Shown here: positions 19,444 through 59,768 of the stretch, one piece after another
Layout of the letters: every line of letters starts with the position of its first letter
Position numbering within the stretch: position 1 is the first letter of the stretch
DNA from: Phyllobates terribilis
Lineage: Eukaryota
Length of the DNA: 64,000 nucleotides
Assembly (NCBI RefSeq): GCF_046119375.1
Contig: NW_027362772.1
Coordinates: 303,676,001-303,740,000 of the forward strand
Reading direction: 5' to 3'
Notes under the pieces: model-generated
What the model was told of the DNA's origin: nothing
Seen by the model: the letters and a program-made list of their open reading frames with translations, nothing else
Databases searched by the model: none
Made by a program: the position numbers and the translations under genes

Positions 19444-30638
<11,195 letters not shown>

Positions 30639-32710: not shown

Positions 32711-32716
32711 AATAAA
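32711..32716 (+). terminator. Probable mfn2 poly(A) signal (alternative AATAAA at 32246-32251)
   Basis: AATAAA followed ~20 nt later by GT-rich cttgtctgtggt. This gives a ~2.1-kb 3'UTR, similar in size to mammalian MFN2. Confidence 0.6.
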
Positions 32717-32756
32717 ACATTTCTTAAATCCTTGTCTGTGGTATTATATGGGATAA

Positions 32757-35700
32757 GCAGCAGAACAGTGAGTGCAGCTCTGGAGTATAATGCAGGATGT
32801 AACTCAGGATCAGTAATGTAATGTATGTGCACAGTGACTGCACCAGCAGAATAGTGAGTGCAGCTCTGGAGTATAATACAGGATGTAACTCAGGATCAGT
32901 AATGTAATGTATGTACACAGTGACTGCACCAGCAGAATAGTGAGTGCAGCTCTGGAGTATCATACAGGATGTAACTCAGGATCAGTAATGTAATGTATGT
33001 ACACAGTGACTGCACCAGCAGAATAGTGAGCGCAGCTCTGGAGTATAATACAGGATGTAACTCAGGATCAGTAATGTAATGTATGTACACAGTGACTGCA
33101 CCAGCAGAATAGTGAGCGCAGCTCTGGAGTATAATGCAGGATGTAACTCAGGATCAGTAATGTAATGTATGTACACAGTGACTGCACCAGCAGAATAGTG
33201 AGCGCAGCTCTGGAGTATAATGCAGGATGTAACTCAGGATCAGTAATGTAATGTATGTGCACAGTGACTGCACCAGCAGAATAGTGAGTGCAGCTCTGGG
33301 GTATAATACAGGATGTAACTCAGGATCAGTAATGTAATGTATGTACACAGTGACTGCACCAGAAGAATAGTGAGTGCAGCTCTGGAGTATAATACAGGAT
33401 GTAACTCAGGATCAGTAATGTAATGTATCTATACAGTGACTGCACCAGCAGAATAGTGAGTGCAGCTCTGGAGTATAATACAGGATGTAACTCAGGATCA
33501 GTAATGTAATGTATGTACACAGAGACTGCACCAGCAGAATAGTGAGTGCAGCTCCGGAGTGTAATACAGGATGTAACTCAGGATCAGTAATGTAATGTAT
33601 GTACACAGTGACTGCACCAGAAGAATAGTGAGTGCAGCTCTGGAGTATAATACAGGGTGTAACTCAGGATCAGTAATGTAATGTATGTACACAGTGACTG
33701 CACCAGCAGAATAGTGAGTGCAGCTCTGGAGTATAATACAAGATGTAACTCAGGATCAGTAATGTATGTACACAGTGACTGCACCAGCAGAATAGTGAGT
33801 GCAGCTCTGAAGTATAATACAAGATGTAACTCAGGATCAGTAATGTATGTACACAGTGACTGCACCAGAAGAATAGTGAGTGCAGCTCTGGGGTATAATA
33901 CAGGATGTAACTCAGGATCAGTAATGTAATGTATGTACACAGTGACTGCACCAGCAGAATAGTGAGTGCAGCTCTGGAGTATAATACAGGATGTAACTCA
34001 GGATCAGTAATGTATGTACACAGTGACTGCACCAGCAGAATAGTGAGTGCAGCTCTGAAGTATAATACAGGATGTAACTCAGGATCAGTAATGTATGTAC
34101 ACAGTGACTGCACCAGCAGAATAGTGAGTGCAGCTCTGGAGTATAATACAGGAGGTAACTCAGGATCAGTAATGTAATGTATGTACACAGTGACTGCACC
34201 AGCAGAATAGTGAGTGCAGCTCTGGAGTATAATACAGGAGGTAACTCAGGATCAGTAATGTAATGTATGTACACAGTGACTGCACCAGCAGAATAGTGAG
34301 TGCAGCTCTGAAGTATAATACAGGATGTAACTCAGGATCAGTAATGTAATGTATGTACACAGTGACTGCACCAGCAGAATAGTGAGTGCAGCTCTGAAGT
34401 ATAATACAGGATGTAACTCAGGATCAGTAATGTAATGTATGTATACAGTGACTGCACCAGCAGAATAGTGAGTGCAGCTCTGGAGTATAATACAGGATGT
34501 AACTCAGGATCAGTAATATAATGTATGTACACAGTGACTGCACCAGCAGAATAGTGAGTGCAGCTCTGGAGTATAATACAGGATGTAACGCAGGATCAGT
34601 AATGTAATGTATGTACACAGTGACTGCACCAGCAGAATAGTGAGTGCAGCGCTGGAGTATAATACAGGATGTAACTCAGGATCAGTAATGTAATGTATGT
34701 ACACAGTGACTGCACCAGCAGAATAGTGAGTGCAGCTCTGGAGTATAATACAGGATGTAACTCAGGATCAGTAATGTATGTATACAGTGACTGCACCAGC
34801 AGAATAGTGAATGCAGCTCTGGAGTATAATACAGGATGTAACTCAGGATCAGTAATGTATGTACACAGTGACTGCACCAGCAGAATAGTGAGTGCAGCTC
34901 TGGAGTATAATACAGGAGGTAACTCAGGATCAGTAATGTATGTACACAGTGACTGCACCAGCAGAATAGTGAGTGCAGCTCTGGAGTATAATACAGGAGG
35001 TAACTCAGGATCAGTAATATAATGTATGTACACACAGACTGCACCAGCAGAATAGTGAGTGCAGCTCTGGAGTGTAATACAGGAGGTAACTCAGGATCAG
35101 TAATGTATGTGCACAGTGACTGCACCAGCAGAATAGGGAGTGCAGCTCTGGAGTATAATACAGGAGGTAACTCAGGATCAGTAATGTAATGTATGTACAC
35201 AGTGACTGCACCAGCAGAATAGTGAGTGCAGCTCTGGAGTATAATACAAGATGTAACTCAGGATCAGTAATGTAATGTATGTACACAGTGACTGCACCAG
35301 CAGAATAGTGAGTGCAGCTCTGGAGGATAATACAGGATGTAGCTCAGGATCAGTAATGTAATGTATGTGCACAGTGACTGCACCAGCAGAATAGTGAGTG
35401 CAGCTCTGGAGTATAATACAGGAGGTAACTCAGGATCAGTAATGTAATGTATGTACACAGTGACTGCACCAGCAGAATAGTGAGTGCAGCTCTGAAGTAT
35501 AATACAGGATGTAACTCAGGATCAGTAATGTAATGTATGTATACAGTGACTGCACCAGCAGAATAGTGAGTGCAGCTCTGGGGTATAATACAGGATGTAA
35601 CTCAGGATCAGTAATGTAATGTATGTACACAGTGACTGCACCAGCAGAATAGTGAGTGCAGCTCTGGAGTATAATACAGGATGTAACTCAGGATCAGTAA

Positions 35701-38700
35701 TGTAATGTATGTACACAGTGACTGCACCAGCAGAATAGTGAGTGCAGCTCTGGAGTATAATACAGGATGTAACTCAGGATCAGTAATATAATGTATGTAC
35801 ACAGTGACTGCACCAGCAGAATAGTGAGTGCAGCTCTGGCGTATAATACAGGATGTAACTCAGGATCACTAATGTAATGTATGTACACAGTGACTGCACC
35901 AGCAGAATAGTGAGTGCAGCTCTGGAGTATAATACAGAATGTAACTCAGGATCAGTAATGTACTGTATGTACACAGTCACTGCACCAGCAGAATAGTGAG
36001 GGCAGCTCTGGGGTATAATACAGGATGTAACTCAGGATCAGTAATGTAATGTATGTACACAGTGACTGCACCAGCAGAATAGTGAGTGCAGCTCTGGAGT
36101 ATAATACAGGAGGTAACTCAGGATCAGTAATGTATGTGCACAGTGACTGCACCAGCAGAATAGTGAGTGCAGCTCTGGAGTATAATACAGGATGTAACTC
36201 AGGATCAGTAATGTAATGTATGTACACAGTGACTGCACCAGCAGAATAGTGAGTGCAGCTCTGGAGTATAATACAGGATGTAAACTCAGGATCAGTAATG
36301 TAATGTATGTACACAGTGACTGCACCAGCAGAATAGTGAATGCAGCGCTGGAGTATAATACAGGATGTAAACTCAGGATCAGTAATGCAATGTATGTACA
36401 CAGTGACTGCACCAGCAGAATAGTGAGTGCAGCTCTGGAGTATAATACAGGATGTAACTCAGGATCAGTAATGTAATGTATGTACACAGTCACTGCACCA
36501 GCAGAATAGTGAGTGCAGCTCCGGAGTATAATACAGATGTAACTCAGGATCAGTAATGTAATGTATGTACACAGTGATTGCACCAGCAGAATAGTGAGCG
36601 CAGCTCTGGAGTATAATACAGGATGTAACTCAGGATCAGTAATGTAATGTATGTACACAGTGACTGCACCAGCAGAATAGTGAGCGCAGCTCTGGAGTAT
36701 AATACAGGATGTAACTCAGGATCAGTAATGTAATGTATGTACACAGTGACTGCACCAGCAGAATAGTGAGTGCAGCTCTGGAGTATAATACAGAATGTAA
36801 CTCAGGATCAGTAATGTAATGTATATACATAATGACTGCACCAGCAGAATAGTGAGTGCAGCTCTGGAGTATAATACAGGATGTAACTCAGGATCAGTAA
36901 TGTAATGTATGTGCACAGTGACTGCACCAGCAGAATAGTGAGTGCAGCTCTGGAGTATAATACAGGAGGTAACTCAGGATCAGTAATGTAATGTATGTAC
37001 ACAGTGACTGCACCAGCAGAATAGTGAGTGCAGCTCTGAAGTATAATACAGGATGTAACTCAGGATCAGTAATGTAATGTATGTATACAGTGACTGCACC
37101 AGCAGAATAGTGAGTGCAGCTCTGGGGTATAATACAGGATGTAACTCAGGATCAGTAATGTAATGTATGTACACAGTGACTGCACCAGCAGAATAGTGAG
37201 TGCAGCTCTGGAGTATAATACAGGATGTAACTCAGGATCAGTAATGTAATGTATGTACACAGTGACTGCACCAGCAGAATAGTGAGTGCAGCTCTGGAGT
37301 ATAATACAGGATGTAACTCAGGATCAGTAATATAATGTATGTACACAGTGACTGCACCAGCAGAATAGTGAGTGCAGCTCTGGCGTATAATACAGGATGT
37401 AACTCAGGATCACTAATGTAATGTATGTACACAGTGACTGCACCAGCAGAATAGTGAGTGCAGCTCTGGAGTATAATACAGAATGTAACTCAGGATCAGT
37501 AATGTACTGTATGTACACAGTCACTGCACCAGCAGAATAGTGAGGGCAGCTCTGGGGTATAATACAGGATGTAACTCAGGATCAGTAATGTAATGTATGT
37601 ACACAGTGACTGCACCAGCAGAATAGTGAGTGCAGCTCTGGAGTATAATACAGGAGGTAACTCAGGATCAGTAATGTATGTGCACAGTGACTGCACCAGC
37701 AGAATAGTGAGTGCAGCTCTGGAGTATAATACAGGATGTAACTCAGGATCAGTAATGTAATGTATGTACACAGTGACTGCACCAGCAGAATAGTGAGTGC
37801 AGCTCTGGAGTATAATACAGGATGTAAACTCAGGATCAGTAATGTAATGTATGTACACAGTGACTGCACCAGCAGAATAGTGAATGCAGCGCTGGAGTAT
37901 AATACAGGATGTAAACTCAGGATCAGTAATGCAATGTATGTACACAGTGACTGCACCAGCAGAATAGTGAGTGCAGCTCTGGAGTATAATACAGGATGTA
38001 ACTCAGGATCAGTAATGTAATGTATGTACACAGTCACTGCACCAGCAGAATAGTGAGTGCAGCTCCGGAGTATAATACAGATGTAACTCAGGATCAGTAA
38101 TGTAATGTATGTACACAGTGATTGCACCAGCAGAATAGTGAGCGCAGCTCTGGAGTATAATACAGGATGTAACTCAGGATCAGTAATGTAATGTATGTAC
38201 ACAGTGACTGCACCAGCAGAATAGTGAGCGCAGCTCTGGAGTATAATACAGGATGTAACTCAGGATCAGTAATGTAATGTATGTACACAGTGACTGCACC
38301 AGCAGAATAGTGAGTGCAGCTCTGGAGTATAATACAGAATGTAACTCAGGATCAGTAATGTAATGTATATACATAATGACTGCACCAGCAGAATAGTGAG
38401 TGCAGCTCTGGAGTATAATACAGGATGTAACTCAGGATCAGTAATGTAATGTATGTGCACAGTGACTGCACCAGCAGAATAGTGAGTGCAGCTCTGGAGT
38501 ATAATACAGGATGTAACTCAGGATCAGTAATGTAATGTATGTACACAGTGACTGCACCAGCAGAATAGTGAGCGCAGCTCTGGAGTATAATGCAGGATGT
38601 AACTCAGGATCAGTAATGTAATGTATGTACACAGTGACTGCACCAGCAGAATAGTGAGGGCAGCTCTGGAGTGTAATACAGGAGGTAACTCAGGATCAGT

Positions 38701-41700
38701 AATGTAATGTATGTACACAGTGACTGCACCAGCAGAATAGTGAGTGCAGCTCTGGAGTATAATACAGGATGTAACTCAGGATCAGTAATGTAATGTATAT
38801 ACACAGTGACTGCACCAGCAGAATAGTGAGTGCAGCTCTGGAGTATAATGCAGGATGTAACTCAGGATCAGTAATGTAATGTATGTGCACAGTGACTGCA
38901 CCAGCAGAATAGTGAGTGCAGCTCTGGGGTATAATACAGGATGTAACTCAGGATCAGTAATGTAATGTATGTACACAGTGACTGCACCAGAAGAATAGTG
39001 AGTGCAGCTCTGGAGTATAATACAGGATGTAACTCAGGATCAGTAATGTAATGTATCTATACAGTGACTGCACCAGCAGAATAGTGAGTGCAGCTCTGGA
39101 GTATAATACAGGATGTAACTCAGGATCAGTAATGTAATGTATGTACACAGAGACTGCACCAGCAGAATAGTGAGTGCAGCTCCGGAGTGTAATACAGGAG
39201 GTAACTCAGGATCAGTAATGTAATGTATGTACACAGTGACTGCACCAGCAGAATAGTGAGTGCAGCTCTGGAGTATAATACAGGAGGTAACTCAGGATCA
39301 GTAATGTAATGTATGTACACAGTGACTGCACCAGAAGAATAGTGAGTGCAGCTCTGGAGTATAATACAAGATGTAACTCAGGATCAGTAATGTATGTACA
39401 CAGTGACTGCACCAGCAGAATAGTGAGTGCAGCTCTGAAGTATAATACAGGATGTAACTCAGGATCAGTAATGTAATGTATGTATACAGTGACTGCACCA
39501 GCAGAATAGTGAGTGCAGCTCTGGGGTATAATACAGGATGTAACTCAGGATCAGTAATGTAATGTATGTACACAGTGACTGCACCAGCAGAATAGTGAGT
39601 GCAGCTCTGGAGTATAATACAGGATGTAACTCAGGATCAGTAATGTATGTATACAGTGACTGCACCAGCAGAATAGTGAATGCAGCTCTGGAGTATAATA
39701 CAGGATGTAACTCAGGATCAGTAATGTATGTACACAGTGACTGCACCAGCAGAATAGTGAGTGCAGCTCTGGAGTATAATACAGGAGGTAACTCAGGATC
39801 AGTAATGTAATGTATGTATACAGTGAATGCAGCGCTGGAGTATAATACAGGATGTAACTCAGGATCAGTAATGTAATGTATGTACACAGTGACTGCACCA
39901 GCAGAATAGTGAGTGCAGCTCTGGAGTATAATACAGGATGTAACTCAGGATCAGTAATATAATGTATGTACACACAGACTGCACCAGCAGAATAGTGAGT
40001 GCAGCTCTGGAGTGTAATACAGGAGGTAACTCAGGATCAGTAATGTATGTACACAGTGACTGCACCAGCAGAATAGGGAGTGCAGCTCTGGAGTATAATA
40101 CAGGAGGTAACTCAGGATCAGTAATGTAATGTATGTACACAGTGACTGCACCAGCAGAATAGTGAGTGCAGCTCTGGAGTATAATACAAGATGTAACTCA
40201 GGATCAGTAATGTAATGTATGTACACAGTGACTGCACCAGCAGAATAGTGAGTGCAGCTCTGGAGGATAATACAGGATGTAGCTCAGGATCAGTAATGTA
40301 ATGTATGTGCACAGTGACTGCACCAGCAGAATAGTGAGTGCAGCTCTGGAGTATAATACAGGATGTAACTCAGGATCAGTAATGTATGTATACAGTGACT
40401 GCACCAGCAGAATAGTGAATGCAGCTCTGGAGTATAATACAGGATGTAACTCAGGATCAGTAATGTATGTACACAGTGACTGCACCAGCAGAATAGTGAG
40501 TGCAGCTCTGGAGTATAATACAGGAGGTAACTCAGGATCAGTAATGTATGTACACAGTGACTGCACCAGCAGAATAGTGAGTGCAGCTCTGGAGTATAAT
40601 ACAGGAGGTAACTCAGGATCAGTAATATAATGTATGTACACACAGACTGCACCAGCAGAATAGTGAGTGCAGCTCTGGAGTGTAATACAGGAGGTAACTC
40701 AGGATCAGTAATGTAATGTATGTACACAGTGACTGCACCAGCAGAATAGTGAGTGCAGCTCTGGAGTATAATACAAGATGTAACTCAGGATCAGTAATGT
40801 ATGTGCACAGTGACTGCACCAGCAGAATAGGGAGTGCAGCTCTGGAGTATAATACAGGAGGTAACTCAGGATCAGTAATGTAATGTATGTACACAGTGAC
40901 TGCACCAGCAGAATAGTGAGTGCAGCTCTGGAGTATAATACAAGATGTAACTCAGGATCAGTAATGTAATGTATGTACACAGTGACTGCACCAGCAGAAT
41001 AGTGAGTGCAGCTCTGGAGGATAATACAGGATGTAGCTCAGGATCAGTAATGTAATGTATGTGCACAGTGACTGCACCAGCAGAATAGTGAGTGCAGCTC
41101 TGGAGTATAATACAGGAGGTAACTCAGGATCAGTAATGTAATGTATGTACACAGTGACTGCACCAGCAGAATAGTGAGTGCAGCTCTGAAGTATAATACA
41201 GGATGTAACTCAGGATCAGTAATGTAATGTATGTATACAGTGACTGCACCAGCAGAATAGTGAGTGCAGCTCTGGGGTATAATACAGGATGTAACTCAGG
41301 ATCAGTAATGTAATGTATGTACACAGTGACTGCACCAGCAGAATAGTGAGTGCAGCTCTGGAGTATAATACAGGATGTAACTCAGGATCAGTAATGTAAT
41401 GTATGTACACAGTGACTGCACCAGCAGAATAGTGAGTGCAGCTCTGGAGTATAATACAGGATGTAACTCAGGATCAGTAATATAATGTATGTACACAGTG
41501 ACTGCACCAGCAGAATAGTGAGTGCAGCTCTGGCGTATAATACAGGATGTAACTCAGGATCACTAATGTAATGTATGTACACAGTGACTGCACCAGCAGA
41601 ATAGTGAGTGCAGCTCTGGAGTATAATACAGAATGTAACTCAGGATCAGTAATGTACTGTATGTACACAGTCACTGCACCAGCAGAATAGTGAGGGCAGC

Positions 41701-44089
41701 TCTGGGGTATAATACAGGATGTAACTCAGGATCAGTAATGTAATGTATGTACACAGTGACTGCACCAGCAGAATAGTGAGTGCAGCTCTGGAGTATAATA
41801 CAGGAGGTAACTCAGGATCAGTAATGTATGTGCACAGTGACTGCACCAGCAGAATAGTGAGTGCAGCTCTGGAGTATAATACAGGATGTAACTCAGGATC
41901 AGTAATGTAATGTATGTACACAGTGACTGCACCAACAGAATAGTGAATGCAGCGCTGGAGTATAATACAGGATGTAACTCAGGATCAGTAATGTAATGTA
42001 TGTACACAGTGACTGCACCAGGAGAATAGTGAGTGCAGCTCTGGAGTATAATACAGGATGTAACTCAGGATCAGTAATGTATGTATACAGTGACTGCACC
42101 AGCAGAATAGTGAATGCAGCTCTGGAGTATAATACAGGATGTAACTCAGGATCAGTAATGTATGTACACAGTGACTGCACCAGCAGAATAGTGAGTGCAG
42201 CTCTGGAGTATAATACAGGATGTAACTCAGGATCAGTAATGTAATGTATGTACACAGTGACTGCACCAGCAGAATAGTGAGTGCAGCTCTGGAGTATAAT
42301 ACAGGATGTAAACTCAGGATCAGTAATGTAATGTATGTACACAGTGACTGCACCAGCAGAATAGTGAATGCAGCGCTGGAGTATAATACAGGATGTAAAC
42401 TCAGGATCAGTAATGCAATGTATGTACACAGTGACTGCACCAGCAGAATAGTGAGTGCAGCTCTGGAGTATAATACAGGATGTAACTCAGGATCAGTAAT
42501 GTAATGTATGTACACAGTCACTGCACCAGCAGAATAGTGAGTGCAGCTCCGGAGTATAATACAGATGTAACTCAGGATCAGTAATGTAATGTATGTACAC
42601 AGTGATTGCACCAGCAGAATAGTGAGCGCAGCTCTGGAGTATAATACAGGATGTAACTCAGGATCAGTAATGTAATGTATGTACACAGTGACTGCACCAG
42701 CAGAATAGTGAGTGCAGCTCTGGAGTATAATACAGGATGTAACTCAGGATCAGTAATGTAATGTATGTACACAGTGACTGCACCAGCAGAATAGTGAGCG
42801 CAGCTCTGGGGTATAATACAGATGTAACTCAGGATCAGTAATGTAATGTATGTACACAGTGACTGCACCAGCAGAATAGTGAGTGCAGCTCCGGAGTATA
42901 ATACAGGAGGTAACTCAGGATCAGTAATGTAATGTATGTACACAGTGACTGCACCAGCAGAATAGTGAGTGCAGCTCTGGAGTATAATACAGAATGTAAC
43001 TCAGGATCAGTAATGTATGTACACAGTGACTGCACCAGCAGAATAGTGAGTGCAGCTCTGGAGTATAATACAGGAGGTAACTCAGGATCAGTAATGTAAT
43101 GTATGTACACAGTGACTGCACCAGCAGAATAGTGAGTGCAGCTCTGGGGTATAATACAGGATGTAACTCAGGATCAGTAATGTAATGTATGTACACAGTG
43201 ACTGCACCAGCAGAATAGTGAGTGCAGCTGTGGAGTATAATACAGGATGCAACTCAGGATCAGTAATGTATGTGCACAGTGACTGTACCAGCAGAATAGT
43301 GAGTGCAGCTCTGGAGTATAATACAGGATGTAACTCAGGATCAGTAATGTATGTACACAGTAACTGCACCAGCAGAATAGTGAGTGCAGCTCTGGAGTAT
43401 AATACAGGATGTAACTCAGGATCAGTAATGTATGTACACAGTGACTGCACCAGCAGAATAGTGAGTGCAGCTCTGGAGTATAATACAGGATGTAGCTCAG
43501 GATCAGTAATGTAATGTATGTGCACAGTGACTGCACCAGCAGAATAGTGAGTGCAGCTCTGGAGTATAATACAGGAGGTAACTCAGGATCAGTAATGTAA
43601 TGTATGTACACAGTGACTGCACCAGCAGAATAGTGAGTGCAGCTCTGGAGTATAATACAGGATGTAACTCAGGATCAGTAATGTAATGTATGCACACAGT
43701 GACTGCACCAGCAGAATAGTGAGTGCAGCTCTGGAGTATAATACAGGATGTAACTCAGGGTCAGTAATGTAATGTATGTACACAGTGACTGCACCAGCAG
43801 AATAGTGAGTGCAGCTCTGGAGTATAATACAGGATGTAACTCAGGATCAGTAATATAATGTATGTACACAGTGACTGCACCAGCAGAATAGTGAGTGCAG
43901 CTCTGGAGTATAATACAGGATGTAACTCAGGATCACTAATGTAATGTATGTACACAGTGACTGCACCAGCAGAATAGTGAGTGCAGCTCTGGAGTATAAT
44001 ACAGGATGTAACTCAGGGTCACTAATGTAATGCATGTACACAGTGACTGCACCAGCAGAATAGTGAGTGCAGCTCTGGAGTATAATACA
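32757..44089 (+). repeat. 86-bp satellite array (~11.3 kb, ~130 units; 81-bp deletion variant interspersed) between mfn2 and miip
   Basis: Unit GTGAGTGCAGCTCTGGAGTATAATACAGGATGTAACTCAGGATCAGTAATGTAATGTATGTACACAGTGACTGCACCAGCAGAATA; ORF-track hits recur every 86 bp. Confidence 0.99.
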
Positions 44090-44189
44090 TGTCTTTGCTA
44101 TTATTGGATTCCAGGCGGAGGGTTGCTGTTGCTATAGCTGTTGTCGCTCTGCGTACTGTACTTACAGCGTTCAGTGATTGACAGCTGAG

Positions 44190-44290
44190 TCGGTTGCTAT
44201 GGTGACTGATGAAGCGTTGTCTTCACTCAACGCGGGAACAGACGCGGCTTTAATTTGACCAATCAGCGGTGTCTCCATTGGTCACGTGAG
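44190..44290 (+). promoter_or_regulatory. miip promoter: RFX X-box, two CCAAT boxes, E-box
   Basis: GTTGCTATGGTGAC at 44193-44206; CCAAT at 44259-44263; ATTGG at 44277-44281; GTCACGTGA at 44281-44289; CpG-rich ~44220-44520. Confidence 0.7.
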
Positions 44291-44399
44291 GAGTAGCCCA
44301 ATTCCTTTTAAAGTGGCAATTCTTCCCAGCACACTGTGTATCACCACACCTAGAGACAAACGTCGCCACTTTAAGAATCGCTGTATTGCGTTGCATAAC

Positions 44400-44534
44400 C
44401 TGCAGGGGGCGCTGGGTGACAGTGACCAGCGGTTGAGCCGCCGGATACCGGACATCCCCGGCGATTGTGCGGCGGGAGCCGGGAGGAGGCCGTATGAGGT
44501 CCCGGGGGATTGAAGACAGGTCCATGTGTATCAG
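44400..44534 (+). other. miip: Candidate miip non-coding exon 1 (boundaries approximate)
   Basis: CpG-rich segment downstream of the promoter motifs; candidate donor TCAG|GTAGTG at 44535. The ATG exon has its own acceptor at 44882, so an upstream exon is required. Confidence 0.4.
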
Positions 44535-44919
44535 GTAGTGAGCTCCGGGGACACGTGTCCACTGCAGGCCCGCTGCATGCTGGGTAGTAATTAAAGGGCT
44601 TATCCATCTGGGATCAGTGCACAACATCTGGTATCCCAGGATCCTCTGCGGCCACTTCTTAGTTACAGTATGTTACTTGGAATATCTGGTAATGTCCAGT
44701 ATGGCGGTCTCCCAGCTACCACCTGTGTGTCTGCTCCCAGGAGACTGTGATGTCAGGGGAAGCTGATGGATCTGTGCTGGTGAACTACAACTCCCAGCAT
44801 GACTATTTGCATCTCGTTTGGGGGTGATCTGCAGCTGACACATATCAGTGATGGTGACGCGATGCCGTCCTGTGATTTACAGATGGAGACGTCCGGATAC
44901 TGATCAGAAGTAATAGAAA

Positions 44920-45036
44920 ATGTCCTCCGAGCGCCTGGACGAGCTGCGGAGTCTGAACAAGTCTCTATTAAAGAAGCTGAATGTGAACCGGGAGGAGCTG
45001 AAGAAGCAGCAGCTATTCACCGACAGCAACATCACA
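44920..45036 (+). CDS. miip: miip coding exon 1 (MSSERLDELRSLNKSLLKKL...SNIT)
   Basis: Acceptor tttacag at 44882; ATG at 44920; donor ACA|gtgagt. Resembles the human N-terminal helix EELAQLRLLNLELL. Confidence 0.85.
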
Positions 45037-48000
45037 GTGAGTTATACCCTCCTGTATCACCATCTGCACTCACTATTCTGCTGGTGCAGTCACTGTGTAC
45101 ATACATTACATTACTGATCCTGAGTTACATCCTGTATTATACTCCAGAGCTGCACTCACTATTCTGCTGGTGCAGTCACTGTGTACATACATTATATTAC
45201 TGATCCTGAGTTACATCCTGTATTATACTCCAGAGCTGCACTCACTATTCTGCTGGTGCAGTCACTGTGTACATACATTACATTACTGATCCTGAGTTAC
45301 ATCCTGTATTATACTCCAGAGCTGCACTCACTATTCTGCTGGTGCAGTCACTGTGTACATACATTACATTATTGATCCTGAGTTACATCCTGTATTATAC
45401 TCCAGAGCTGCACTCACTATTCTGCTGGTGCAGTCACTGTGTACATACATTACATTACTGATCCTGAGTTACATCCTGTATTATACTCCAGAGCTGCACT
45501 CACTATGCTGCTGGTGCAGTCACTGTGTACATACATTACATTACTGATCCTGAGTTACATCCTGTATTATACTCCAGAGCTGCACTCACTATGCTGTTGA
45601 TGGAGTCACTGTGCACTTACATTACATTACTGATCCTGAGTTACATCCTGTATTATACTTCAGAGCTGCACTCACTATTCTGCTGGTGCAGTCACTGTGT
45701 ACATACATTACATTACTGATCCTGAGTTACATCCTGTATTATACTCCAGAGCTGCACTCACTATTCTGCTGGTGCTGTCACTGTGTACATACATTAAATT
45801 ACTGATCCTGAGTTACATCCTGTATTATACTCCAGAGCTGCACTCACTATTCTGCTGCTGCAGTCACTGTGTACATACATTACATTACCGATCCTGAGTT
45901 ACCTCCTGTATTATACTCCAGAGCTGCGCTCACTATTCTGCAAGTGCAGTCACTGTGTACATACATTACTGATCCTGAATTACCTCTTGTATTATACTCC
46001 AGAGCTGCGCTCACTATTCTGCAAGTGCAGTCACTGTGTACATACATTACTGATCCTGAATTACCTCTTGTATTATACTCCAGAGCTGCACTCACTATTC
46101 TGCTGGTGCAGTCACTGTACATACATTACTGATCCTGAGTTACATCCTGTAGTATACTCCAGAGCTGCACTCACTATTCTGCTGGTGCTGTCACTGTGTA
46201 CATACATTACATTACTGATCCTGAGTTACCTCCTGTATTATACTCCAGAGCTGCGCTCACTATTCTGCTTGTGCAGTCACTGTGTACATACATTACTGAT
46301 CCGGAGTTACATCCTGTATTATACTCCAGAGCTGCACTCACTATTCTGCTGGTGCAGTCACTGTGTACATACATTACATTACTGATCCTGAGTTACCTCC
46401 TGTATTATACTCCAGAGCTGCACTCACTATTCTGCTGCTGCAGTCACTGTGTACATACATTACATTACTGATCCTGAGTTACCTCCTGTATTATACTCCA
46501 GAGCTGCGCTCACTATTCTGCTTGTGCAGTCACTGTGTACATACATTACTGATCCTGAGTTACATCCTGTATTATACTCCAGAGCTGCACTCACTATTCT
46601 GCTGGTGCAGTCACTGTGTACATACATTACATTACTGATCCTGAGTTACATCCTGTATTATACTCCAGAGCTGCGCTCACTATTCTGCTTGTGCAGTCAC
46701 TGTGTACATACATTACTGATCCTGAGTTACCTCCTGTATTATACTCCAGAGCTGCGCTCACTATTCTGCTTGTGCAGTCACTGTGTACATACATTACTGA
46801 TCCTGAGTTACATCCTGTATTATACTCCAGAGCTGCACTCACTATTCTGCTGGTGCAGTCACTGTGTACATACATTACATTACTGATCCTGAGTTACATC
46901 CTGTATTATACTCCAGAGCTGCGCTCACTATTCTGCTTGTGCAGTCACTGTGTACATACATTACTGATCCTGAGTTACCTCCTGTATTATACTCCAGAGC
47001 TGCGCTCACTATTCTGCTGGTGCAGTCACTGTGTACATACATTACATTACTGATCCTGAGTTACATCCTGTATTATACTCCAGAGCTGCACTCACTATTC
47101 TGCTGGTGCAGTCACTGTGTACATACACTACATTACTGATCCTGAGTTACATCCTGTATTATACTCCAGAGCTGCACTCACTATTCTGCTGGTGCAGTCA
47201 CTGTGTACATACATTACTGATCCTGAGTTACATCCTGTATTATATTCCAGAGCTGCACTCACTATTCTGCTGGTGCAGTCACTGTGTACATACATTACAT
47301 TACTGATCCTGAGTTACCTCCTGTATTATACTCCAGAGCTGCGCTCACTATTCTGCTTGTGCAGTCACTGTGTACATACATTACTGTACACAGTAATCGG
47401 GTTTCCATGTCCCATTAGATCCAACAGCAAGCGGCAGAGCTCTTAAGGTATATTCTAGGCTGTTCCTGTGAGTTACACCCTCGCCTACAGGGCGGGGGTC
47501 AGGGTGTCTGCTACACATATAGGCTTCTTGGAGAAAAGCAGCTTATAATCTTGTCAGCTGCAAGGGCTGATAACAGAGAACTGCAGCTGCACAACAAATG
47601 CCGATACTCCCAGCTTTAGCTTTATCAGTGTTTTAATGCACTTTTGTTCATTGGATTCTCTTATTTTTTGCATCTTTCTTCATGCAGAGCTGCAAACCTA
47701 CAACGACACTGGCCGGATCTCGGAGCGGTCAGGATCCAGCTCTGCAGACCTTGCAAGGTTCATCCTCCGCTGCCAGGAAAGCCTTGTGTACCCCCAAGAC
47801 CTCCCATCCTAGGGGGCCTCACCCACACGGTGCGTCCGTAGTGATTCTTGGGGGGTCCGGACACAGGGGGCGCTCTGCTCTGGACGTTATTAGGGTGAAC
47901 TCTCCAGTGAAACGCGTCAGTATCCTGAACTCCACAATGATTGACCCCAAATCTGACGCTTCGGGGGACACAAGGGATTTTCCTGCTCAGTATATCGACC

Positions 48001-51000
48001 GGTTAGAGAATGACGGAAACCTGCGGAGCAAAGAACCGAGGACCCCAAAATCTATTCTCCTTACACCAAACCGAAGCTCCAAGGTAACGACTGCGCTTAC
48101 AACAGGTGGTCGGACCTCCGTCTGCCGATACCGGGGGCCGAACTGTAGGAATTCATGATTGCAGTTATAAGAGACCCCAATAATTCTGCCTGACAACCCA
48201 TATGGCCAGGGCCGGTGTCAGCACCCGGGCAAGTCCCGGGGCCCTGAGCAGGCGGGGGGCCCACTCGCGGTCGGGCTATGGGCGGAGGAGAGCGGTGTCA
48301 GCGCCCGCCCTTCTCCGCCGCTTGCTCAGGGCCCCGGCAGCCGGATACTTACCTCTCCCCGTGCCTCCACAGATTCGTTGTCTTCCTGCTGTGCTCTCCC
48401 TGAGACGTCTCAGGTCAGAGGGCGCGGTGACGTCTTTCCACGTCGCTCTCTCCTGAGCCGTCACAGGCAGTGCAGAGCCGGAAGACGTCGGCGACGCTGG
48501 AGTACAGACCTGAGCAGCGGCAGCAGGTGAGGAGGAGTGAGGTGAGTATTTGAGTTTTAATTTTTTTTTTTAATGTATGGAGGCTTGGGGCATTATATGG
48601 GGGGGGGGGTGACATCCTGCATGGAGCATTATATGGGGGCGGTGACATGCTGCATGGGGCATTATATGGGGGCGGTGACATCCTGCATGGGGCATTATAA
48701 AGAGAAGGGGGGGTGATATCCTGCATGGGGCATTACATGGGGGGGTGACATCCTGCATGGGGCATTATAAAGAGAGGGGGGTGATATCCTGCATGGGGCA
48801 TTACATGGGGGGGTGACATCCTGCATGGGGCATTATAAAGAGAGGGGGGGGACATCCTGCATGGGGCATTATATGGGGGGGGACATCCTGCATGGGGCAT
48901 TATATGGGGGGGGACATCCTGCATGGGGCATTATATGGGTGGGGGCATCCTGCATGGGGCATTATATGGGTGGGGGCATCCTGCATGGGGCATTACATGG
49001 GTGGGGGCATCCTGCATGGGGCATTATATGGGGTGGAGAGGTGACATCCTGCATGGGGCATTGTATGGGGGGGTGACATCCTGCATGGGGATCCAGTATT
49101 CCGTATAACGTGTTATATGGGGGCTAGTATACTGTGTGGAGTGTTATATGGGGGCCAGTATCCCGTATGGAGCTTTTTATGGGGGCCAGTATACTGTGTG
49201 GAGTGTTATATGGGGGCCAGTATTCCGTATGGAGCTTTTTATGGGGGCCAGTATACTGTGTGGAGTGTTATATGGGGGCCAGTATTCCGTATGGAGCCTT
49301 ATATGGGGGCCAGTATTCTGTGTGGAGCGATTCACTGGTTTCTGAGCTATTGTGGAATTTACTATAGATATCACTCATGTAATGTAAGAAGTGAAATCCT
49401 TGGCCTTGTACTATATATATATATTTCTCTGCGGTATCTGTGCATCATGAATCGTGGTATGTGTTAAAGGGGCCACAGACTCTCGCCCGGCCCAGAAAAA
49501 CCTGGAGCCGACCCTGCATATGGCCAAAATCTCAGGTAAATCCCTGGTTGTCGCCCTACTTCCTGGGATCCAGATCCTGCAATGATAAAGGTGAAAAATT
49601 CCTGACAACAGTGGGACCTACACTGGTGCCTCCTGTTAACGAGACAATATCACGGTTTCAGGCTTATGGATGTGATTAGTCTGTTAACCCTTTCTTTCCC
49701 CAGAGACGTGAATGGGTAACAGGGGCTGGTTTGGCGGAGCGCCCCTTTAAACCCTCCTGCAGCTCTCTAGCTCTGGTAAATCTGTCCCTGTGCCTTTAAA
49801 TGCTGTGTGTCCCCAGAGCCACCCTGCGTGTGTCTGCGTCGCCGCGCTGCAGCTTTAAGGCCGAGTTATCAGCAGTTGCATTGAGTGACTTGCAGGCAGA
49901 AGGGGGGCCGACGTGACTCATTCTGGGGTCTCACACTCATTCTGCAAACTCACTGACTAAGATTTTCCTTCCCAGAAATGACGGGTCCTGGCCCCCTAGC
50001 ACCCGCTCTGCAGATCCCCCCCCCCTGACATTATGAGAAGGTCACTGTCGCTTCTTCTTGCAGAGAGATGCAGGGCGCGTCACCTTCCTGTGCGACGGCG
50101 AATTCCCTCCCCTGGAGCCACGGTGGTCTGCTCGCCCCCTGCTGGGATACGACTGGATAGCGGGTCAGTATGTGTGGACACAGAACCACCTCCTGTGGAT
50201 TGACAGACACATCCTGTTATAGAGGATCTATGGGATGAATAAAAAGCGCCCCTCCTGCATGCAGGTTGTGTCTGGTACTGCACTCCAGTCTTCATTCACT
50301 GCAGTGGCACAGAGCTACAGTACCAGACACAGCCTATGAGCAGGCGTGGCGGCAAAAAAAAAAAACTAAAATTGTCTCTGGTGGGAAGAGGTTAATCTTG
50401 GCATACATAGCCCTACCATTAACCCTCTCACCTGCAGGACTTTTGGAAGTGAAGTCTCCCATCACCAATAAATCTGACCAGTTTTTCGCAGAGATCAATG
50501 AATTCCGACTCATCAACCGCGAGGAGTGCGCACACGAGTGTTTTACTGAGTGAGTCAACGTTTTGAATTGGGCATTTACAGGTGGGGGCGCTGTGCCATT
50601 GTTGTCTATGAAAAGTAGGTCCCTACTGTCATGGTGAGAAGTGGTACTGCAGGTAAGACCAGAAATGCAATATATTCTGGAATAACCTTGTAAGCAGTTT
50701 CCTCTTATATACTCGTCCTCCTTACTTGGGAAGATGCAAACGATCATTATCACTGTCGGGCTTTTGCCTCCTATTATCCAATCACTCCCACTTGTAAAAT
50801 AAATCGTTCCGGTGATAAACTTTTAGTGTTGGGGGAATTACATTTTAAGCAATTCACTACTATGTTTAAGAGACTTTTGTGTTTGTCTTCAGATCAGGGG
50901 CCCAGGACTCATCGGCAGAAGATCTGGACCTCTCGTTGGACACTCATCAGTGTAAGGAGACTTTTTTTTTTTTTTTTTTTTGCAGCTTTTAGGTTGTTGG

Positions 51001-52604
51001 ACTTTGGAGGCCGCTCTGGTCACCGCTGCTTTTCTGTTTCTGTGTTTCAGGTGTATTCTGCTACCGAGTGAACCAGCGATTGTTTACATCCCCGGTGGGT
51101 GCAGAACCTGCATGTCCCGTATGTAAGAAGCGTAGGGGCAGACGCCTCGTCTCCGTAGAGGAGCCCGCGTATATCCGGTAAGTGAACGCTCCACTCGCCC
51201 AACACAAGAAACTATGGGATGGCTGCAGGGGAAGGTGAAGACTTTTACAACCTTGTTGTTTTTTTTTATTCCCTTTAAAACATAAAATTAAGCAACTGAG
51301 TAATGAAAATATCTCCTGCCGTTCTGCGGTTACAGGTCCCGTGCAAAGTTATATGTTGCCATGGGTACTAGCGACACGATTCCTTTTTATTTATATTAGG
51401 GAGAAACAGTGGACAGATAAAGGGACTGGCTGCTGGGCTTGTTTGTAGTCTGTAATTATGGAGCCACATAGTTCTGCATAGGAGCTGCATACACAAAACC
51501 GTAAAGGATTTTTAATAAATATTGTTTTCATTTATATTTTAAATGCACAAAAGCAATAAGAAAATTCAAAGGAACGTATTGTCCATTCTGATTTTAATGG
51601 GATCACGTGGTCTCACAGGATGAGGACCTTCACAGATAACCTGGTTCAACGGTGTACTGGCCCTTTAAATGTCTGTGTTTAATGTTATTAGTCTCCTATG
51701 TTCTGTTACCAATACAGAGGTTATGTTTTAGGGTGAGCATCCCCCGGAGCACGCTGCTCCCACCTTACAAGTACCGAGCCCACAGGAGAAAAAGCTTCGA
51801 CCCTACAGACAGCCTCGCCTTGCCGTCAGTAAGTCGCTTGCCGTTCTCCAGCCTGTATCCTGGCCTGGAATTTCTACATGTCCAAAATGAATCCGATGCA
51901 GCCATTTCTTTGGGGTGCATGCTATTTTTTTTGGAAGGGATCCATTTTCAAGTCCTCTATTTGCTGTCAGTGAATGGAAACATTCAGCCGTACGACCAGA
52001 GGTTCCAGTCTGCTGACACACGTGATTCTGATGTACTCGCTGGCCGTTTCCCCGTGTGCTCAGGAGGGGCGAAGGTTCCGTTCACTGAGTGCAAGCAGAG
52101 ATCTTACTTGTCTAATCCTTTGTGTATCTCTTTTATTCTCTTTTTTTTTCCATTCGCTTCTGCCAGTTTATCACCCCTGTAACTTTGCACTCGTGTACAC
52201 ATTACTTACTGGACAACAACTCCCAGCATTCGCTGTCAGGCTCTTGCTGGGAGTTGTAGTGCTGCAGCAGCTTTGATCCTGTCCCAGAGCCTTTTATATT
52301 ATTTGCTCGCTTTTAGCACTGTTTAGCTGGATGGGAGAACGCCGGGCCGTCCTGCAACCTGAAAGTCACCAGTCTGGACCTGAGGACCTCAACGGGGCCA
52401 AAAATGGTGACTGCACCCACAACAGCGAGCGTGGTAAGAGAATGCACCATTACTATGCCTGCATACTAGGGGGCGCAATTCTCTTGTTGTTAATGCTGAT
52501 AACTCTTATATCTCCAGGACGCCGCTTCTTACTTCGCTTCACGGGCCACATCTGATAATCTGCTGAACTTGTCCCGATCCATTGCCTTCCATCACAGGAA
52601 GTAA
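44920..52604 (+). CDS. miip: Migration and invasion inhibitory protein MIIP; 9 coding exons, 1212 nt, 403 aa
   Basis: Continuous frame over GT-AG exons (117,396,100,112,59,127,97,117,87 nt). Family motifs: RVTF, RPLLGYDWIAG, CVFCYRVNQRLF, VSIPRSTLLPPYKYRAHRRKSFDPTDSLALP, HCLAGWE. Lies downstream of mfn2, as in human. Confidence 0.93.
45064..47386 (-). repeat. 86/81-bp satellite array (~2.3 kb, ~28 units), inverted relative to the 32.8-44.1 kb array, in the miip intron after the ATG exon
   Basis: Units read ctgcactcactattctgctggtgcagtcactgtgtacatacattac..., the reverse complement of the left array; the ORF-track peptides switch strand. Confidence 0.99.
47688..48083 (+). CDS. miip: miip coding exon 2 (SCKPTTT...PKSILLTPNRSSK)
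   Basis: catgcag|AGC ... AAG|gtaac; 396 nt; phase 0 at both ends. Confidence 0.8.
48207..49516. mobile_element. Non-autonomous hAT-type element (1310 bp) with internal minisatellites, in a miip intron
   Basis: Perfect 8-bp TSD CATATGGC (48199-48206 and 49517-49524); termini CAGGGCCGG...CCGACCCTG; CpG-rich left arm; ~30-bp GGGGCATTATATGGGGGGTGACATCCTGCAT repeats at ~48590-49090. Confidence 0.9.
50064..50163 (+). CDS. miip: miip coding exon 3 (RDAGRVTF...RPLLGYDWIAG)
   Basis: ttgcag|AGA ... GCGG|gtcagt; 100 nt. Confidence 0.93.
50438..50549 (+). CDS. miip: miip coding exon 4 (LLEVKSPIT...EFRLINREECAHECFT)
   Basis: ctgcag|GAC ... TGA|gtgagt; 112 nt. Confidence 0.92.
50893..50951 (+). CDS. miip: miip coding exon 5 (SGAQDSS...DTHQ)
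   Basis: ttcag|ATC ... CAGT|gtaagg; 59 nt; restores the frame between its neighbours. Confidence 0.85.
51051..51177 (+). CDS. miip: miip coding exon 6 (CVFCYRVNQRLF...CPVC...PAYIR)
   Basis: tttcag|GTG ... CCG|gtaagt; 127 nt. Confidence 0.94.
51732..51828 (+). CDS. miip: miip coding exon 7 (VSIPRSTLLPPYKYRAHRRKSFDPTDSLALPS)
   Basis: ttttag|GGT ... TCA|gtaagt; 97 nt. Confidence 0.95.
52317..52433 (+). CDS. miip: miip coding exon 8 (HCLAGWE...TTASV)
   Basis: ttttag|CAC ... GTG|gtaaga; 117 nt. Confidence 0.9.
52518..52604 (+). CDS. miip: miip coding exon 9 (DAASYFASRATSDNLLNLSRSIAFHHRK*)
   Basis: ctccag|GAC; TAA at 52602-52604; AATAAA follows at 52779. Confidence 0.75.
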   Translation, partial: DAASYFASRATSDNLLNLSRSIAFHHRK

Positions 52605-57112: not shown

Positions 57113-58600
57113 TTAATATCTCAACCCTGCTGGGAATTGGTGACTGAGGCACACGCTTATCCAGGCACACACTGTACTTACTGTACGAGAATCTGCGCCT
57201 ACTCAGTTTCCTTTTCCTAGACAGTGGTTGATGTCACCGCCGCCGCTGAACTCTCTCTCATTTCCAACACAACAGAACCAAATTTGAGACTACAACTCCC
57301 AACATTTCCTGATAAGTGCAGATAAGCTGGAGTTGGGGGAACCTTGGCTGAAGACATTAATATTCTGGGAAGCACAACCCAAACAGCAGCATTAGGGACG
57401 GTCAGTACAGAGGACGCAGAGGCGACAGCGGTACGACAGAGGGACAGCAGTGGTGCCCTGCTCTGTGCCACCCCATGTCATCTGGCGCCCCCTCTGTCCA
57501 CATCTTATATCACCTAAAAGGCTCAGAACCTTTATGCCAGCACTCAGGGCAATATTTATGTCCCAAAGCCATAGTGTGCCACCTATGTGAGATGCCTTCC
57601 TCACTACGAGCAACAGGAACCTCATTATTGCGGCATACGGGGCCATACAACTGCCCGGCGATGTTTGCCACATTTCTGATCCGGCCATTTGGACTTGTCC
57701 ATAGTATCAGAAAGACACAACTGGATAAACGAACACTTGTATATAACTTTCAAGAAAGCTCCACATCATTGGTCCGTCCTGTTTTCTGCATCAGTTCCTT
57801 TGTTTTCTAGATCTCTGATTGCTGTTATTGAATAGGATTCTTCATTATTTACCGGCATTGGCTATAAACCTATACTGGTAATGTGATGGGCACCCATGGG
57901 TCACGGCTCGTTACCGGACATGGGACTGATACACCTTAATGACCAATGCACCTGTGTGCCCACCCGTCACATGACCATGACAGATTTATATGTGCTAGAT
58001 TTAAACAATAAAAGTGTATATTGAATGACATCAAGCAGAGATCTTGAAAATTAGACGAAGAACAAAGTATACTGAGATAAGACTCTTTTTTTTTTTTCTC
58101 CCAGTTGGGAGAAGGGATGGGTGCAAATGGCCAAATATTGATCAGGGATGGCGGAAGGATAAGGCTGGACCTTTAGCTGGAAAACAGGAGCAACTGCTCA
58201 CCTTCTAATGCAGGATCTGCTGGATATTGAATATTGGCAGCTGCACAAGGGCCACCAGGCAAGGGGGCGCACTGCCATAACATCAGCGTCCATGAGATTA
58301 CATGTCAGCCTGAGCTGATAACCTTCATGGCTCTCAATTACTGGTGTAATATGATGGGTTATCAGAGAGTAAGGGCCCCAGATATGGGGGGCACAGGGGC
58401 CCTCACCGTCTTCACACAGTCATGAATCAGAATTGAAGTATTGGGTTGAGTAGCTACAAGCGTGTGATAACCAATATCTGCAGGGGGGAGGACTTCAGTC
58501 ACTTGTGGTCGAAAGAATTAAAGTTTCTGAATGACTGTGACAAAATGATAGAACGCAATGATCGGTGTGAAAGAGCGACACTGCTCTCTGACATGACACC

Positions 58601-58985
58601 TGCAGTGTGAGCAGCACAGCACAAGGCTCTGCAGTGTGAGCAGCACATCACAAGGCTCTGCAGTGTGAGCAGCACATCACAAGGCTCTGCAGTGTGAGCA
58701 GCACATCACAAGGCTCTGCAGTGTGAGCAGCACATCACAAGGCTCTGCAGTGTGAGCAGCACATCACAAGGCTCTGCAGTGTGAGCAGCACATCACAAGG
58801 CTCTGCAGTGTGAGCAGCACAGCACAAGGCTCTGCAGTGTGAGCAGCACATCACTAGGCTCTGCAGTGTGAGCAGCACAGCACAAGGCTCTGCAGTGTGA
58901 GCAGCACATCACAAGGCTCTGCAGTGTGAGCAGCACAGCACAAGGCTCTGCAGTGTGAGCAGCACAGCACAAGGCTCTGCAGTGT
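58601..58985. repeat. 29-bp minisatellite (TGCAGTGTGAGCAGCACATCACAAGGCTC), ~13 copies
   Basis: Period 29 (58601, 58630); very homogeneous. Confidence 0.95.
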
Positions 58986-59618: not shown

Positions 59619-59768
59619 NNNNNNNNNNNNNNNNNNNNNNNNNNNNNNNNNNNNNNNNNNNNNNNNNNNNNNNNNNNNNNNNNNNNNNNNNNNNNNNNNN
59701 NNNNNNNNNNNNNNNNNNNNNNNNNNNNNNNNNNNNNNNNNNNNNNNNNNNNNNNNNNNNNNNNNNNN
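59619..59768. other. Assembly gap (150 N)
   Basis: Run of N. Confidence 1.

What the first reader, a model, noticed from the sequence alone, without database searches (positions are those of the whole stretch)
32757..47386. miip promoter and start codon form the ~1-kb loop of a giant inverted satellite repeat (possible invertible promoter cassette)
A unique 974-bp island (44090-45063) holds the whole miip promoter, exon 1 and the ATG exon. It is bracketed by 11.3 kb of satellite in one orientation and 2.3 kb of the same satellite in the opposite orientation. Recombination between inverted homologous arms would flip the island, cutting miip off from its promoter and aiming that promoter back at the mfn2 3' end, like a phase-variation switch. 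Even without flipping, a housekeeping-type CpG promoter sitting between satellite blocks raises the question of how it resists silencing.
Basis: partly seen in the sequence, partly recalled or inferred. Interest (0 to 1): 0.75.

Follow-up and report, generated by a model that had tools for sequence, protein, structure and literature searches.

The report
Frog miip promoter between inverted satellites
The start of a frog's miip gene really does sit on a 1-kb unique island between two oppositely oriented blocks of one 86-base repeat, but that repeat is enormously abundant across the genome and nothing indicates that the island flips like a switch.

Summary
An 86-bp satellite runs 32758-44089 (+, about 132 units) and 45064-47384 (-, about 27 units). 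Between them lies a unique 974-bp island.

An independent DNA sample gives one 1,021-nt contig covering the whole island plus 23 nt of satellite on each side, so both inner junctions are real. An RNA-like contig is spliced 44424-44534 | 44883-45036 and runs on for 1,538 nt. This confirms exon 1, a GT..AG intron and the ATG exon on the island. MIIP and mitofusin exons are confirmed by Pfam.

The switch reading is not supported:
- The satellite is a hyper-abundant dispersed family. Tens of thousands of contigs were laid, word depth is 10^5-10^6 times single copy, and a third array lies at 24.4 kb.
- Contigs from other loci show direct strand switches of this satellite.
- The arms are about 94.5% identical and slightly but significantly differentiated. 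They share no flank homology, and their longest perfect match is 228 bp.
- No recombinase system is evident.

The two arrays most likely arose and grew independently. A rare inversion allele produced by recombination between the arms cannot be excluded. Only reads spanning the 2.3-kb arm can test it.

The satellite is almost CpG-free, which partly answers the silencing question. Earlier notes of this scan describe other promoters in this genome flanked by tandem arrays.

The parts
32758..44089 (+). Array A: about 132 units of the 86-bp satellite (86- and 81-bp variants). It fills the whole space between the mfn2 3' end and the miip promoter.
   Evidence: Internal block duplications: exact repeats of 1,625 bp at offset 1,544 and 1,155 bp at offset 5,694.
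44090..45063 (+). Unique 974-bp island holding the miip promoter, exon 1, intron 1, the ATG exon and the first 27 nt of intron 2.
   Evidence: One contig of independent sample X5 spans 44067-45086.
44090..44423 (+). Only unique DNA upstream of the observed transcript 5' end. It is a CpG-island-like promoter with CCAAT 44259-63, inverted CCAAT 44277-81 and an E-box 44283-88.
   Evidence: Read directly from the sequence. GC 0.54 and CpG o/e 0.88 over 44090-44560. Function as a promoter is inferred.
44424..44534 (+). miip exon 1 (non-coding). The 5' end is a minimum, set by where the contig ends.
   Evidence: X7 1,807-nt contig. A joint 44531>44880 (cut +3, GT..AG) is also seen in X17.
44883..45036 (+). 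miip exon 2 with the ATG at 44920 and 39 codons, phase 0. A 6-codon uORF starts at 44883.
   Evidence: The contigs stop matching exactly at the donor 45036|GT.
45064..47384 (-). Array B: about 27 units of the same satellite in reverse orientation, inside miip intron 2.
47688..48083 (+). miip exon 3 (132 codons). Boundaries are inferred from frame and splice consensus.
   Evidence: Not checked with reads, and no Pfam hit for this exon alone.
24361..24660 (-). Array C: about 3 diverged units of the same satellite in an mfn2 intron.
   Evidence: nhmmer E 4e-51.
32711..32716 (+). Last AATAAA of the mfn2 3' UTR, 42 nt before array A.
   Evidence: The mfn2 stop codon is at 30636-30638.

Best explanation
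These are two separate local arrays of one hyper-abundant, dispersed, almost CpG-free 86-bp satellite family of a poison-frog-type genome. One array (11.3 kb, + orientation) occupies the entire mfn2-miip intergenic space. The other (2.3 kb, - orientation) lies in miip intron 2. Between them, 974 bp of original sequence survive, carrying the CpG-rich CCAAT-box promoter, exon 1 and the ATG exon, and the gene is transcribed and spliced normally across the intronic array. Each array grows and homogenises on its own by unequal exchange and block duplication. The inverted arrangement is a by-product of independent seeding or insertion with random orientation. There may also be a filter on intronic copies: the + strand of every monomer carries a consensus 5' splice site GTGAGT, and both intronic arrays in this window have the other strand in the pre-mRNA. 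The structure is static in practice. Shown here: the anatomy, the inner junctions in two individuals, the splicing, the abundance and dispersal of the family, and the differentiation of the arms. Inferred: independent origin, the splice-site filter, and stability.
For: - Architecture.
- Inner junctions in an independent sample, plus a spliced transcript.
- MIIP and mitofusin exons.
- Family abundance: 21,594 (X1) and 43,172 (X5) contigs were laid on only 260 nt of satellite. Summed word depth is 10^6-10^7 against 5.8 and 18.4 on the island. Contigs of 81 and 86 nt are present genome-wide. The family is also seen in a run labelled as a second organism.
- A third, more diverged array lies 8 kb upstream.
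- Contigs that join + satellite directly to - satellite with no island occur in all four runs, so strand switches of this family exist at other loci (table 5).
- B aligns to A at about 94.2-94.8% in every register, with no privileged or mirror-image partner segment.
- There is no flank homology beyond chance.
- B has private monomer types. Column 15 C with column 40 G is found in 7 of 25 B units and 0 of 131 A units. Label permutation: 0 of 2000 reach the observed differentiation.
- GTGAGT on the + strand: A 108, B 0, C 0.
- Dispersed euchromatic satellite arrays near genes are a known pattern (PMC10048060).
- Earlier scan notes report other promoters in this genome flanked by tandem arrays (not re-tested here).
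Against: - A and B monomer pools are almost as close to each other (mean 3.69 differences) as within A (3.36) or within B (3.6). They share the 5-bp deletion variant and the T/G variant, whereas array C is clearly more diverged. This would also fit one array being copied from the other.
- Array A alone is flanked by an imperfect 18-19-nt direct repeat (p about 0.003) whose meaning is open.
- No long read was available, so stability of orientation is assumed, not shown.
- The splice-site filter rests on two intronic arrays only.
Confidence: 0.72

Rival explanations
1. Single-event origin. Array B is an inverted copy of part of array A, or the reverse. It would have been moved across the promoter by template switching, by reintegration of an excised block, or by a foldback-type element, and then diverged. 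The structure would still be static today.
For: The A and B monomer pools are nearly indistinguishable (AB 3.69 against AA 3.36 and BB 3.6) and share variant types. Array C in the same window is much more diverged (85% matches). The innermost 430 bp of B reach 98.8% identity to A. Strand-switch junctions are common in this family.
Against: No segment of A is a privileged or mirror-image partner of B; several A positions tie. There is no homology between the flanks of the two arrays. The shared 81-bp variant also occurs in contigs from elsewhere in the genome. The inner ends are in different phases: A ends at unit position 37 and B at position 20. A simple inversion cannot give this layout without also flipping the island, which holds a functional exon in the correct orientation.
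Confidence: 0.18
2. Recurrent recombination-mediated inversion polymorphism. Homologous exchange between the inverted arms occasionally flips the island in the germ line or soma. This would give a miip-null allele whose promoter points at the mfn2 3' end, as at human loci flanked by inverted repeats.
For: The arms share a 228-bp perfect tract and 430 bp at 98.8% next to the island. In humans, inverted repeats are hotspots of recurrent inversion, with one rate estimated at about 5e-5 per generation (PMC6748972).
Against: Overall arm identity is only about 94.5%, whereas the human cases involve highly identical repeats. Repeated flipping should mix the inner parts of the arms, yet the arm populations stay differentiated. 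A flipped allele destroys a conserved gene. RNA contigs show the assembled orientation in use. No second orientation has been seen, though short contigs could not reveal one.
Confidence: 0.06
3. Programmed invertible promoter cassette, a true switch comparable to bacterial phase variation.
For: Only the geometry: a promoter plus start codon between inverted repeats.
Against: There are no short specific recombination sites and no dedicated recombinase nearby. The Tc1 copy in an mfn2 intron is an unrelated transposon. The arms are ordinary members of a satellite present at a very large number of other loci. No vertebrate precedent is known outside antigen-receptor rearrangement (general knowledge).
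Confidence: 0.01
4. Assembly artefact: a false strand switch or misjoin inside a collapsed satellite.
For: Long, nearly identical block duplications in A (1,625-bp exact repeat) are the kind of sequence assemblers get wrong. The outer junctions and array lengths were not checked.
Against: Both inner junctions, each with an orientation-specific 23-mer of satellite, lie on a single contig of an independent individual and in contigs of the possible source sample.
Confidence: 0.03

Closest known systems
Dispersed euchromatic satellite DNA arrays near genes (for example Drosophila 1.688 and Tribolium TCAST copies; review PMC10048060)
   Same: One satellite family occurs as many short to medium arrays scattered through gene-rich DNA, in introns and beside promoters, with local homogenisation.
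   Different: Here the arrays are long (2.3 and 11.3 kb), sit within 330 bp of a transcription start, and lie in opposite orientation around it. No regulatory effect has been tested.
Inversion polymorphisms mediated by inverted repeats (human HsInv loci, PMC6748972; Xq28 FLNA/EMD from general knowledge)
   Same: A unique segment lies between long inverted homologous arms that could recombine.
   Different: The known cases have highly identical duplicated segments and both orientations documented. Here the arms are about 94.5% identical tandem arrays of very unequal length, and only one orientation is known.
Foldback (FB) transposons of Drosophila (general knowledge)
   Same: Long inverted arms built from tandem repeats around a central loop.
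   Different: The loop here is a host promoter and a conserved coding exon in its syntenic place. No duplication of the outer flanks was found, and the arm lengths differ five-fold.
Bacterial invertible promoters (fimS, hin; general knowledge)
   Same: A promoter between inverted repeats.
   Different: Those use short specific repeats and a site-specific recombinase, and both states coexist in populations. None of this is seen here.
Inverted Alu pairs in primate transcripts (general knowledge)
   Same: A dispersed repeat is present in both orientations within and next to one transcription unit, so read-through RNA could form long duplexes.
   Different: Array A lies upstream of the miip start, so a duplex needs read-through from mfn2. 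This was not tested.

Membership tests
Dispersed satellite DNA family | Head-to-tail tandem monomers with high identity | tested here: met
   86-bp period, 93-95% matches, 132 + 27 units.
Dispersed satellite DNA family | The same monomer at many other genomic loci | tested here: met
   A third array at 24.36-24.66 kb. Between 21,594 and 43,172 contigs were laid on 260 nt of satellite, with many different loose ends and word depth 10^5-10^6 times the island (depth is only a rough guide).
Dispersed satellite DNA family | Array-specific homogenisation | tested here: met
   Block duplications inside A and inside B. B has private types, and no permutation of 2000 reaches the observed differentiation.
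Inversion polymorphism mediated by inverted repeats | Inverted homologous arms flanking a unique segment | tested here: met
Inversion polymorphism mediated by inverted repeats | Highly identical arms with long perfect tracts | tested here: inconclusive
   About 94.5% identity over 2.3 kb, 98.8% over the inner 430 bp, longest perfect tract 228 bp.
Inversion polymorphism mediated by inverted repeats | Both orientations present among chromosomes | not testable with these tools
   All runs are short Logan contigs that end 23 nt into the satellite. Orientation relative to the outer flanks cannot be read from them.
Programmed invertible promoter (phase variation) | Short specific inverted repeats plus a dedicated site-specific recombinase | tested here: not met
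   The arms are kilobase satellite arrays. No recombinase gene lies beside them (ORF lists). Only a Tc1 transposon is present, in an mfn2 intron.
Programmed invertible promoter (phase variation) | Promoter inside the invertible segment | tested here: met
   The transcript 5' end is at about 44420-44424 on the island.
Foldback-type transposon | Target-site duplication at the outer ends, and a loop that belongs to the element | tested here: not met
   The left flank of A against the right flank of B gives no direct repeat above chance. The loop holds the host promoter and the ATG exon.
CpG-island promoter | GC above 0.5 and CpG o/e above 0.6 over more than 200 bp at the transcription start | tested here: met
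   44090-44560: GC 0.544, CpG o/e 0.88.
MIIP gene (Pfam PF15734) | Exons matching the MIIP profile downstream on the same strand | tested here: met
   Three exon-bearing ORFs give E 1e-5 to 1e-15.

The most novel reading that the evidence does not exclude
The inverted satellite arms recombine at an appreciable rate, so that frog populations or tissues carry both orientations of the miip promoter island. That would be a naturally occurring, satellite-driven on/off inversion of a vertebrate gene start.
Probability: 0.05. Interest if true: 0.7.

Novelty: new member of a known kind. Interest (0 to 1): 0.27.

Why it matters
As it stands, this is a clean example of how far satellite DNA can invade a gene in a giant frog genome. 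The entire intergenic spacer and most of an intron are satellite, and a working promoter is left with only about 330 bp of unique upstream DNA. That amounts to a natural deletion experiment, bounding whatever proximal control sequence lies upstream to about 330 bp. It also shows that a CpG-free satellite can abut a CpG island without shutting it off. It matters more only if long reads show both orientations. In that case satellite arrays would be shown to drive gene-disrupting inversions.

Tried and rejected
- I looked for a mirror-image (palindromic) relation between the inner parts of the arms. Several A positions tie as best partner of inner B, so this was rejected.
- I looked for extended homology between the flanks of A, B and C as a sign of duplication of array plus flank. 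Nothing rises above shuffles at the 300-bp scale.
- A 15-nt direct repeat around B (45037-45051 and 47468-47482) looked like a target-site duplication. Both copies resemble the satellite's own CTGAGTTACATCC stretch, so I do not count it.
- An nhmmer profile of the monomer found no degenerate relic units beside the arrays.
- An inverted match inside the island (44122-44143 against 45007-45030) is low-complexity and partly coding, so I treat it as chance.
- Rfam found nothing on the island or satellite. The monomer dimer folds no better than shuffles, z 0.27.
- Exact-product look-ups of two window ORFs found no public contig, so no further individuals or haplotypes were gained.
- The findings search by sequence was blank.
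- Orthologous loci of other frogs could not be reached. The DNA collections here are microbial or viral. The word-based protein search cannot return full-length MIIP from a single exon because of its length window.
- The N run at 59619-59768 was left alone.
Full report
**Observation**

Tandem Repeats Finder reports an 86-bp unit from 32758 to 44089, in about 132 copies with 89-95% matches depending on the period row. It reports the reverse complement of the same unit from 45064 to 47384, in 27.5 copies with 93% matches. GC skew is +0.2 across the left array and -0.2 across the right one, while the stretch between them has 52% GC. A 28-nt core of the unit matches 158 times in the window against 0 in 100 shuffles. 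All matches are + in the left array and - in the right. Four further - matches lie at 24.37-24.66 kb. Units are mostly 86 bp, with an 81-bp variant lacking five bases in both arrays.

**Is it real DNA or an assembly slip?**

All runs that hold the island are kept as short Logan contigs. I laid four runs on 43960-45190, that is, the island plus 130 nt of satellite on each side.

- I kept the stretch short because the tool refuses long repeats and only one call was allowed.
- In X5, a different sample and study from the possible source, a single 1,021-nt contig covers 44067-45086.
- That is the whole island plus 23 orientation-specific letters of satellite at each end. It carries four substitutions and one inserted T relative to the window (tables 3, 4, 8).
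- X1, the possible source, gives 44062-44799 and 44772-45086.

The inverted arrangement at both inner junctions therefore exists in at least two individuals. The outer junctions and the array lengths were not checked.

**The genes**

- ORFs at 50058-50219, 50266-50550 and 51652-52179 (+) match Pfam MIIP (E 1e-5, 2e-7, 1e-15).
- ORFs at 21648-21977, 29235-29477 and 30111-30347 (+) match Dynamin_N and Fzo_mitofusin (E down to 9e-37).
- The mitofusin reading frame ends at 30636-30638.
- AATAAA signals lie at 32633 and 32711, and array A starts at 32758. The satellite therefore begins right at the end of the mfn2 3' UTR and fills the whole intergenic space.

**The island**

- An RNA-like run (X7) gives a 1,807-nt contig that matches 44424-44534, skips a GT..AG intron (44535-44882), and matches 44883-45036.
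- The match stops exactly at a GT donor, with 1,538 more letters beyond. A run labelled as a second organism (X17) shows the same joint with one mismatch in exon 2 (tables 5, 8).
- The ATG at 44920 opens 39 codons ending in phase 0 at 45036.
- Exon 3 (47688-48083) is inferred from frame and splice consensus only.
- Upstream of the transcript start there are just about 330 unique bases, with CCAAT (44259-63), ATTGG (44277-81) and CACGTG (44283-88).
- GC is 0.54 and CpG o/e 0.88 over 44090-44560.

**What the satellite is**

- On only 260 nt of satellite, 21,594 (X1) and 43,172 (X5) contigs were laid.
- Summed word depth in the satellite bins is 10^6-10^7, against 5.8 and 18.4 on the island.
- Hundreds of different loose ends lead from the satellite into unrelated sequence.
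- The tool warns that summed depth is not a copy number, so I take this only as [quoted passage not shown].
- Contigs 81 and 86 nt long show that both length variants are genome-wide.
- A third array of about three more diverged units sits in an mfn2 intron at 24361-24660.
- Table 5 lists contigs in all four runs in which + satellite runs directly into - satellite, or the reverse, with no island between. Several have 30-54 letters on the shorter side. Strand switches of this family therefore occur elsewhere.
- The monomer has no Rfam match and no unusual fold.
- The array has almost no CpG: o/e 0.05, with 26 CpG in 11.3 kb.

Dispersed euchromatic satellite arrays near genes are a described pattern (PMC10048060). 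Earlier notes of this scan call the genome poison-frog-like. They also report other promoters in it flanked by tandem arrays, in one case inverted. I did not re-test those notes.

**Relation of the two arms**

- B aligns to A at 94.2-94.8% in every register, and no A segment stands out. Within A the median is about 95%.
- Mean monomer differences are 3.36 within A, 3.6 within B and 3.69 between them. This small differentiation is significant: 0 of 2000 label permutations reach it.
- B has private types. Column 15 C with column 40 G is found in 7 of 25 B units and 0 of 131 A units. A has many private variants of its own.
- The longest perfect match between arms is 228 bp. Within A, exact repeats reach 1,625 bp at an offset of 1,544 bp, so each array grows by its own block duplications.
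- The inner 430 bp of B reach 98.8% identity to A, but four A positions are nearly tied, so there is no mirror symmetry.
- Flanks of the arrays share nothing beyond chance at the 300-bp scale.
- A simple inversion cannot produce the layout, because it would also flip the island, whose exon is in the correct orientation.

**How it most likely works**

I read this as two independently seeded and independently growing arrays of a hyper-abundant satellite that happen to bracket the miip start. The gene works normally. Its proximal promoter is confined to about 330 bp, and intron 2 is spliced across 2.3 kb of satellite.

One inferred detail concerns splicing. The + strand of the unit carries GTGAGT, a consensus 5' splice site, 108 times in A. 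On the + strand this motif occurs 0 times in B and 0 times in C, and those are the two arrays that lie inside introns of + strand genes. Intronic arrays may be tolerated only in that orientation, which would make an inverted pair with an unconstrained intergenic array a one-in-two outcome. With two intronic cases this is only a lead.

**The switch idea**

Recombination between inverted repeats does cause recurrent inversions in humans (PMC6748972). A 228-bp perfect tract makes a rare event here conceivable. Several points argue against a switch:

- The arms are far less identical than the human examples.
- They have not been mixed.
- A flip would abolish a conserved gene.
- There is no recombinase system.
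- The same satellite lies at a very large number of other places.

Short contigs cannot show orientation relative to the outer flanks, so a low-frequency inverted allele is not excluded. I give it about 6%, and a programmed switch about 1%.

**Open point**

Array A alone is bracketed by an imperfect direct repeat, TGTCTGTGGTATTATATGG at 32733-32751 and TGTCTTTGCTATTATTGG at 44090-44107. It lies within 6 nt of the array on one side and immediately after it on the other. Against random 25-mer pairs of the window, p is about 0.003. It could be an old target-site duplication of a block insertion, or chance.

**Verdict**

The invertible-cassette reading is not supported. This is a new instance of known kinds of structure, of modest interest unless long reads reveal both orientations.

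Noticed in passing
window 32733-32751 and 44090-44107: An imperfect 18-19-nt direct repeat brackets array A, within 6 nt of the array on one side and immediately after it on the other (p about 0.003 against random 25-mer pairs). It may be an old target-site duplication of a block insertion, or chance. Arrays B and C have none.
   Followed up: partly
window 32758-44089 (+), 45064-47384 (-), 24361-24660 (-): The + strand of the satellite unit carries the consensus 5' splice site GTGAGT. On the + strand it occurs 108 times in A and 0 times in B and C. Both intronic arrays have the other strand in the host pre-mRNA, which may reflect an orientation filter on intronic copies.
   Followed up: partly
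window 43960-44089 and 45064-45190 (table 5): Contigs from all four runs join + satellite directly to - satellite, or the reverse, with no island between, at depths above single copy. Strand switches of this family therefore occur at other loci.
   Followed up: no
window 44775-44802: A short motif (ACTACAACTCCCAGCATG-like) in miip intron 1 has at least nine other copies in the window on both strands. Its word depth is 10-45 times the island. It is probably a fragment of a small dispersed element.
   Followed up: partly
window 44493-44919: The miip leader contains upstream ATGs. One in exon 1 (about 44493) opens 23 codons, and one at the first base of exon 2 (44883) opens 6 codons. Both stop before the main ATG at 44920.
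   Followed up: no
window 35343-42712: Array A contains very recent block duplications: exact repeats of 1,625 bp at offset 1,544 bp, 1,155 bp at offset 5,694 bp and 898 bp at offset 4,150 bp. This is either real higher-order growth or a point where the assembly should be checked.
   Followed up: partly
window 27290-28921: A Tc1-type transposon with a long open frame (363 codons at 27611-28699) lies in an mfn2 intron.
   Followed up: no
window 3604-4045, 5508-6861, 10472-12178, 19727-21130, 23357-23909, 48603-49329, 58600-58985: There are seven further unrelated tandem arrays (units of 19, 30, 23/46, 49, 35/25, 31/62 and 29 bp). The window is unusually rich in minisatellites.
   Followed up: no
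window 61500-64000: Open frames here look like gag, protease and reverse transcriptase of an LTR-type retroelement and run off the window end. They were judged by eye from the ORF list only.
   Followed up: no
window 59619-59768: A run of 150 N (assembly gap or mask).
   Followed up: no
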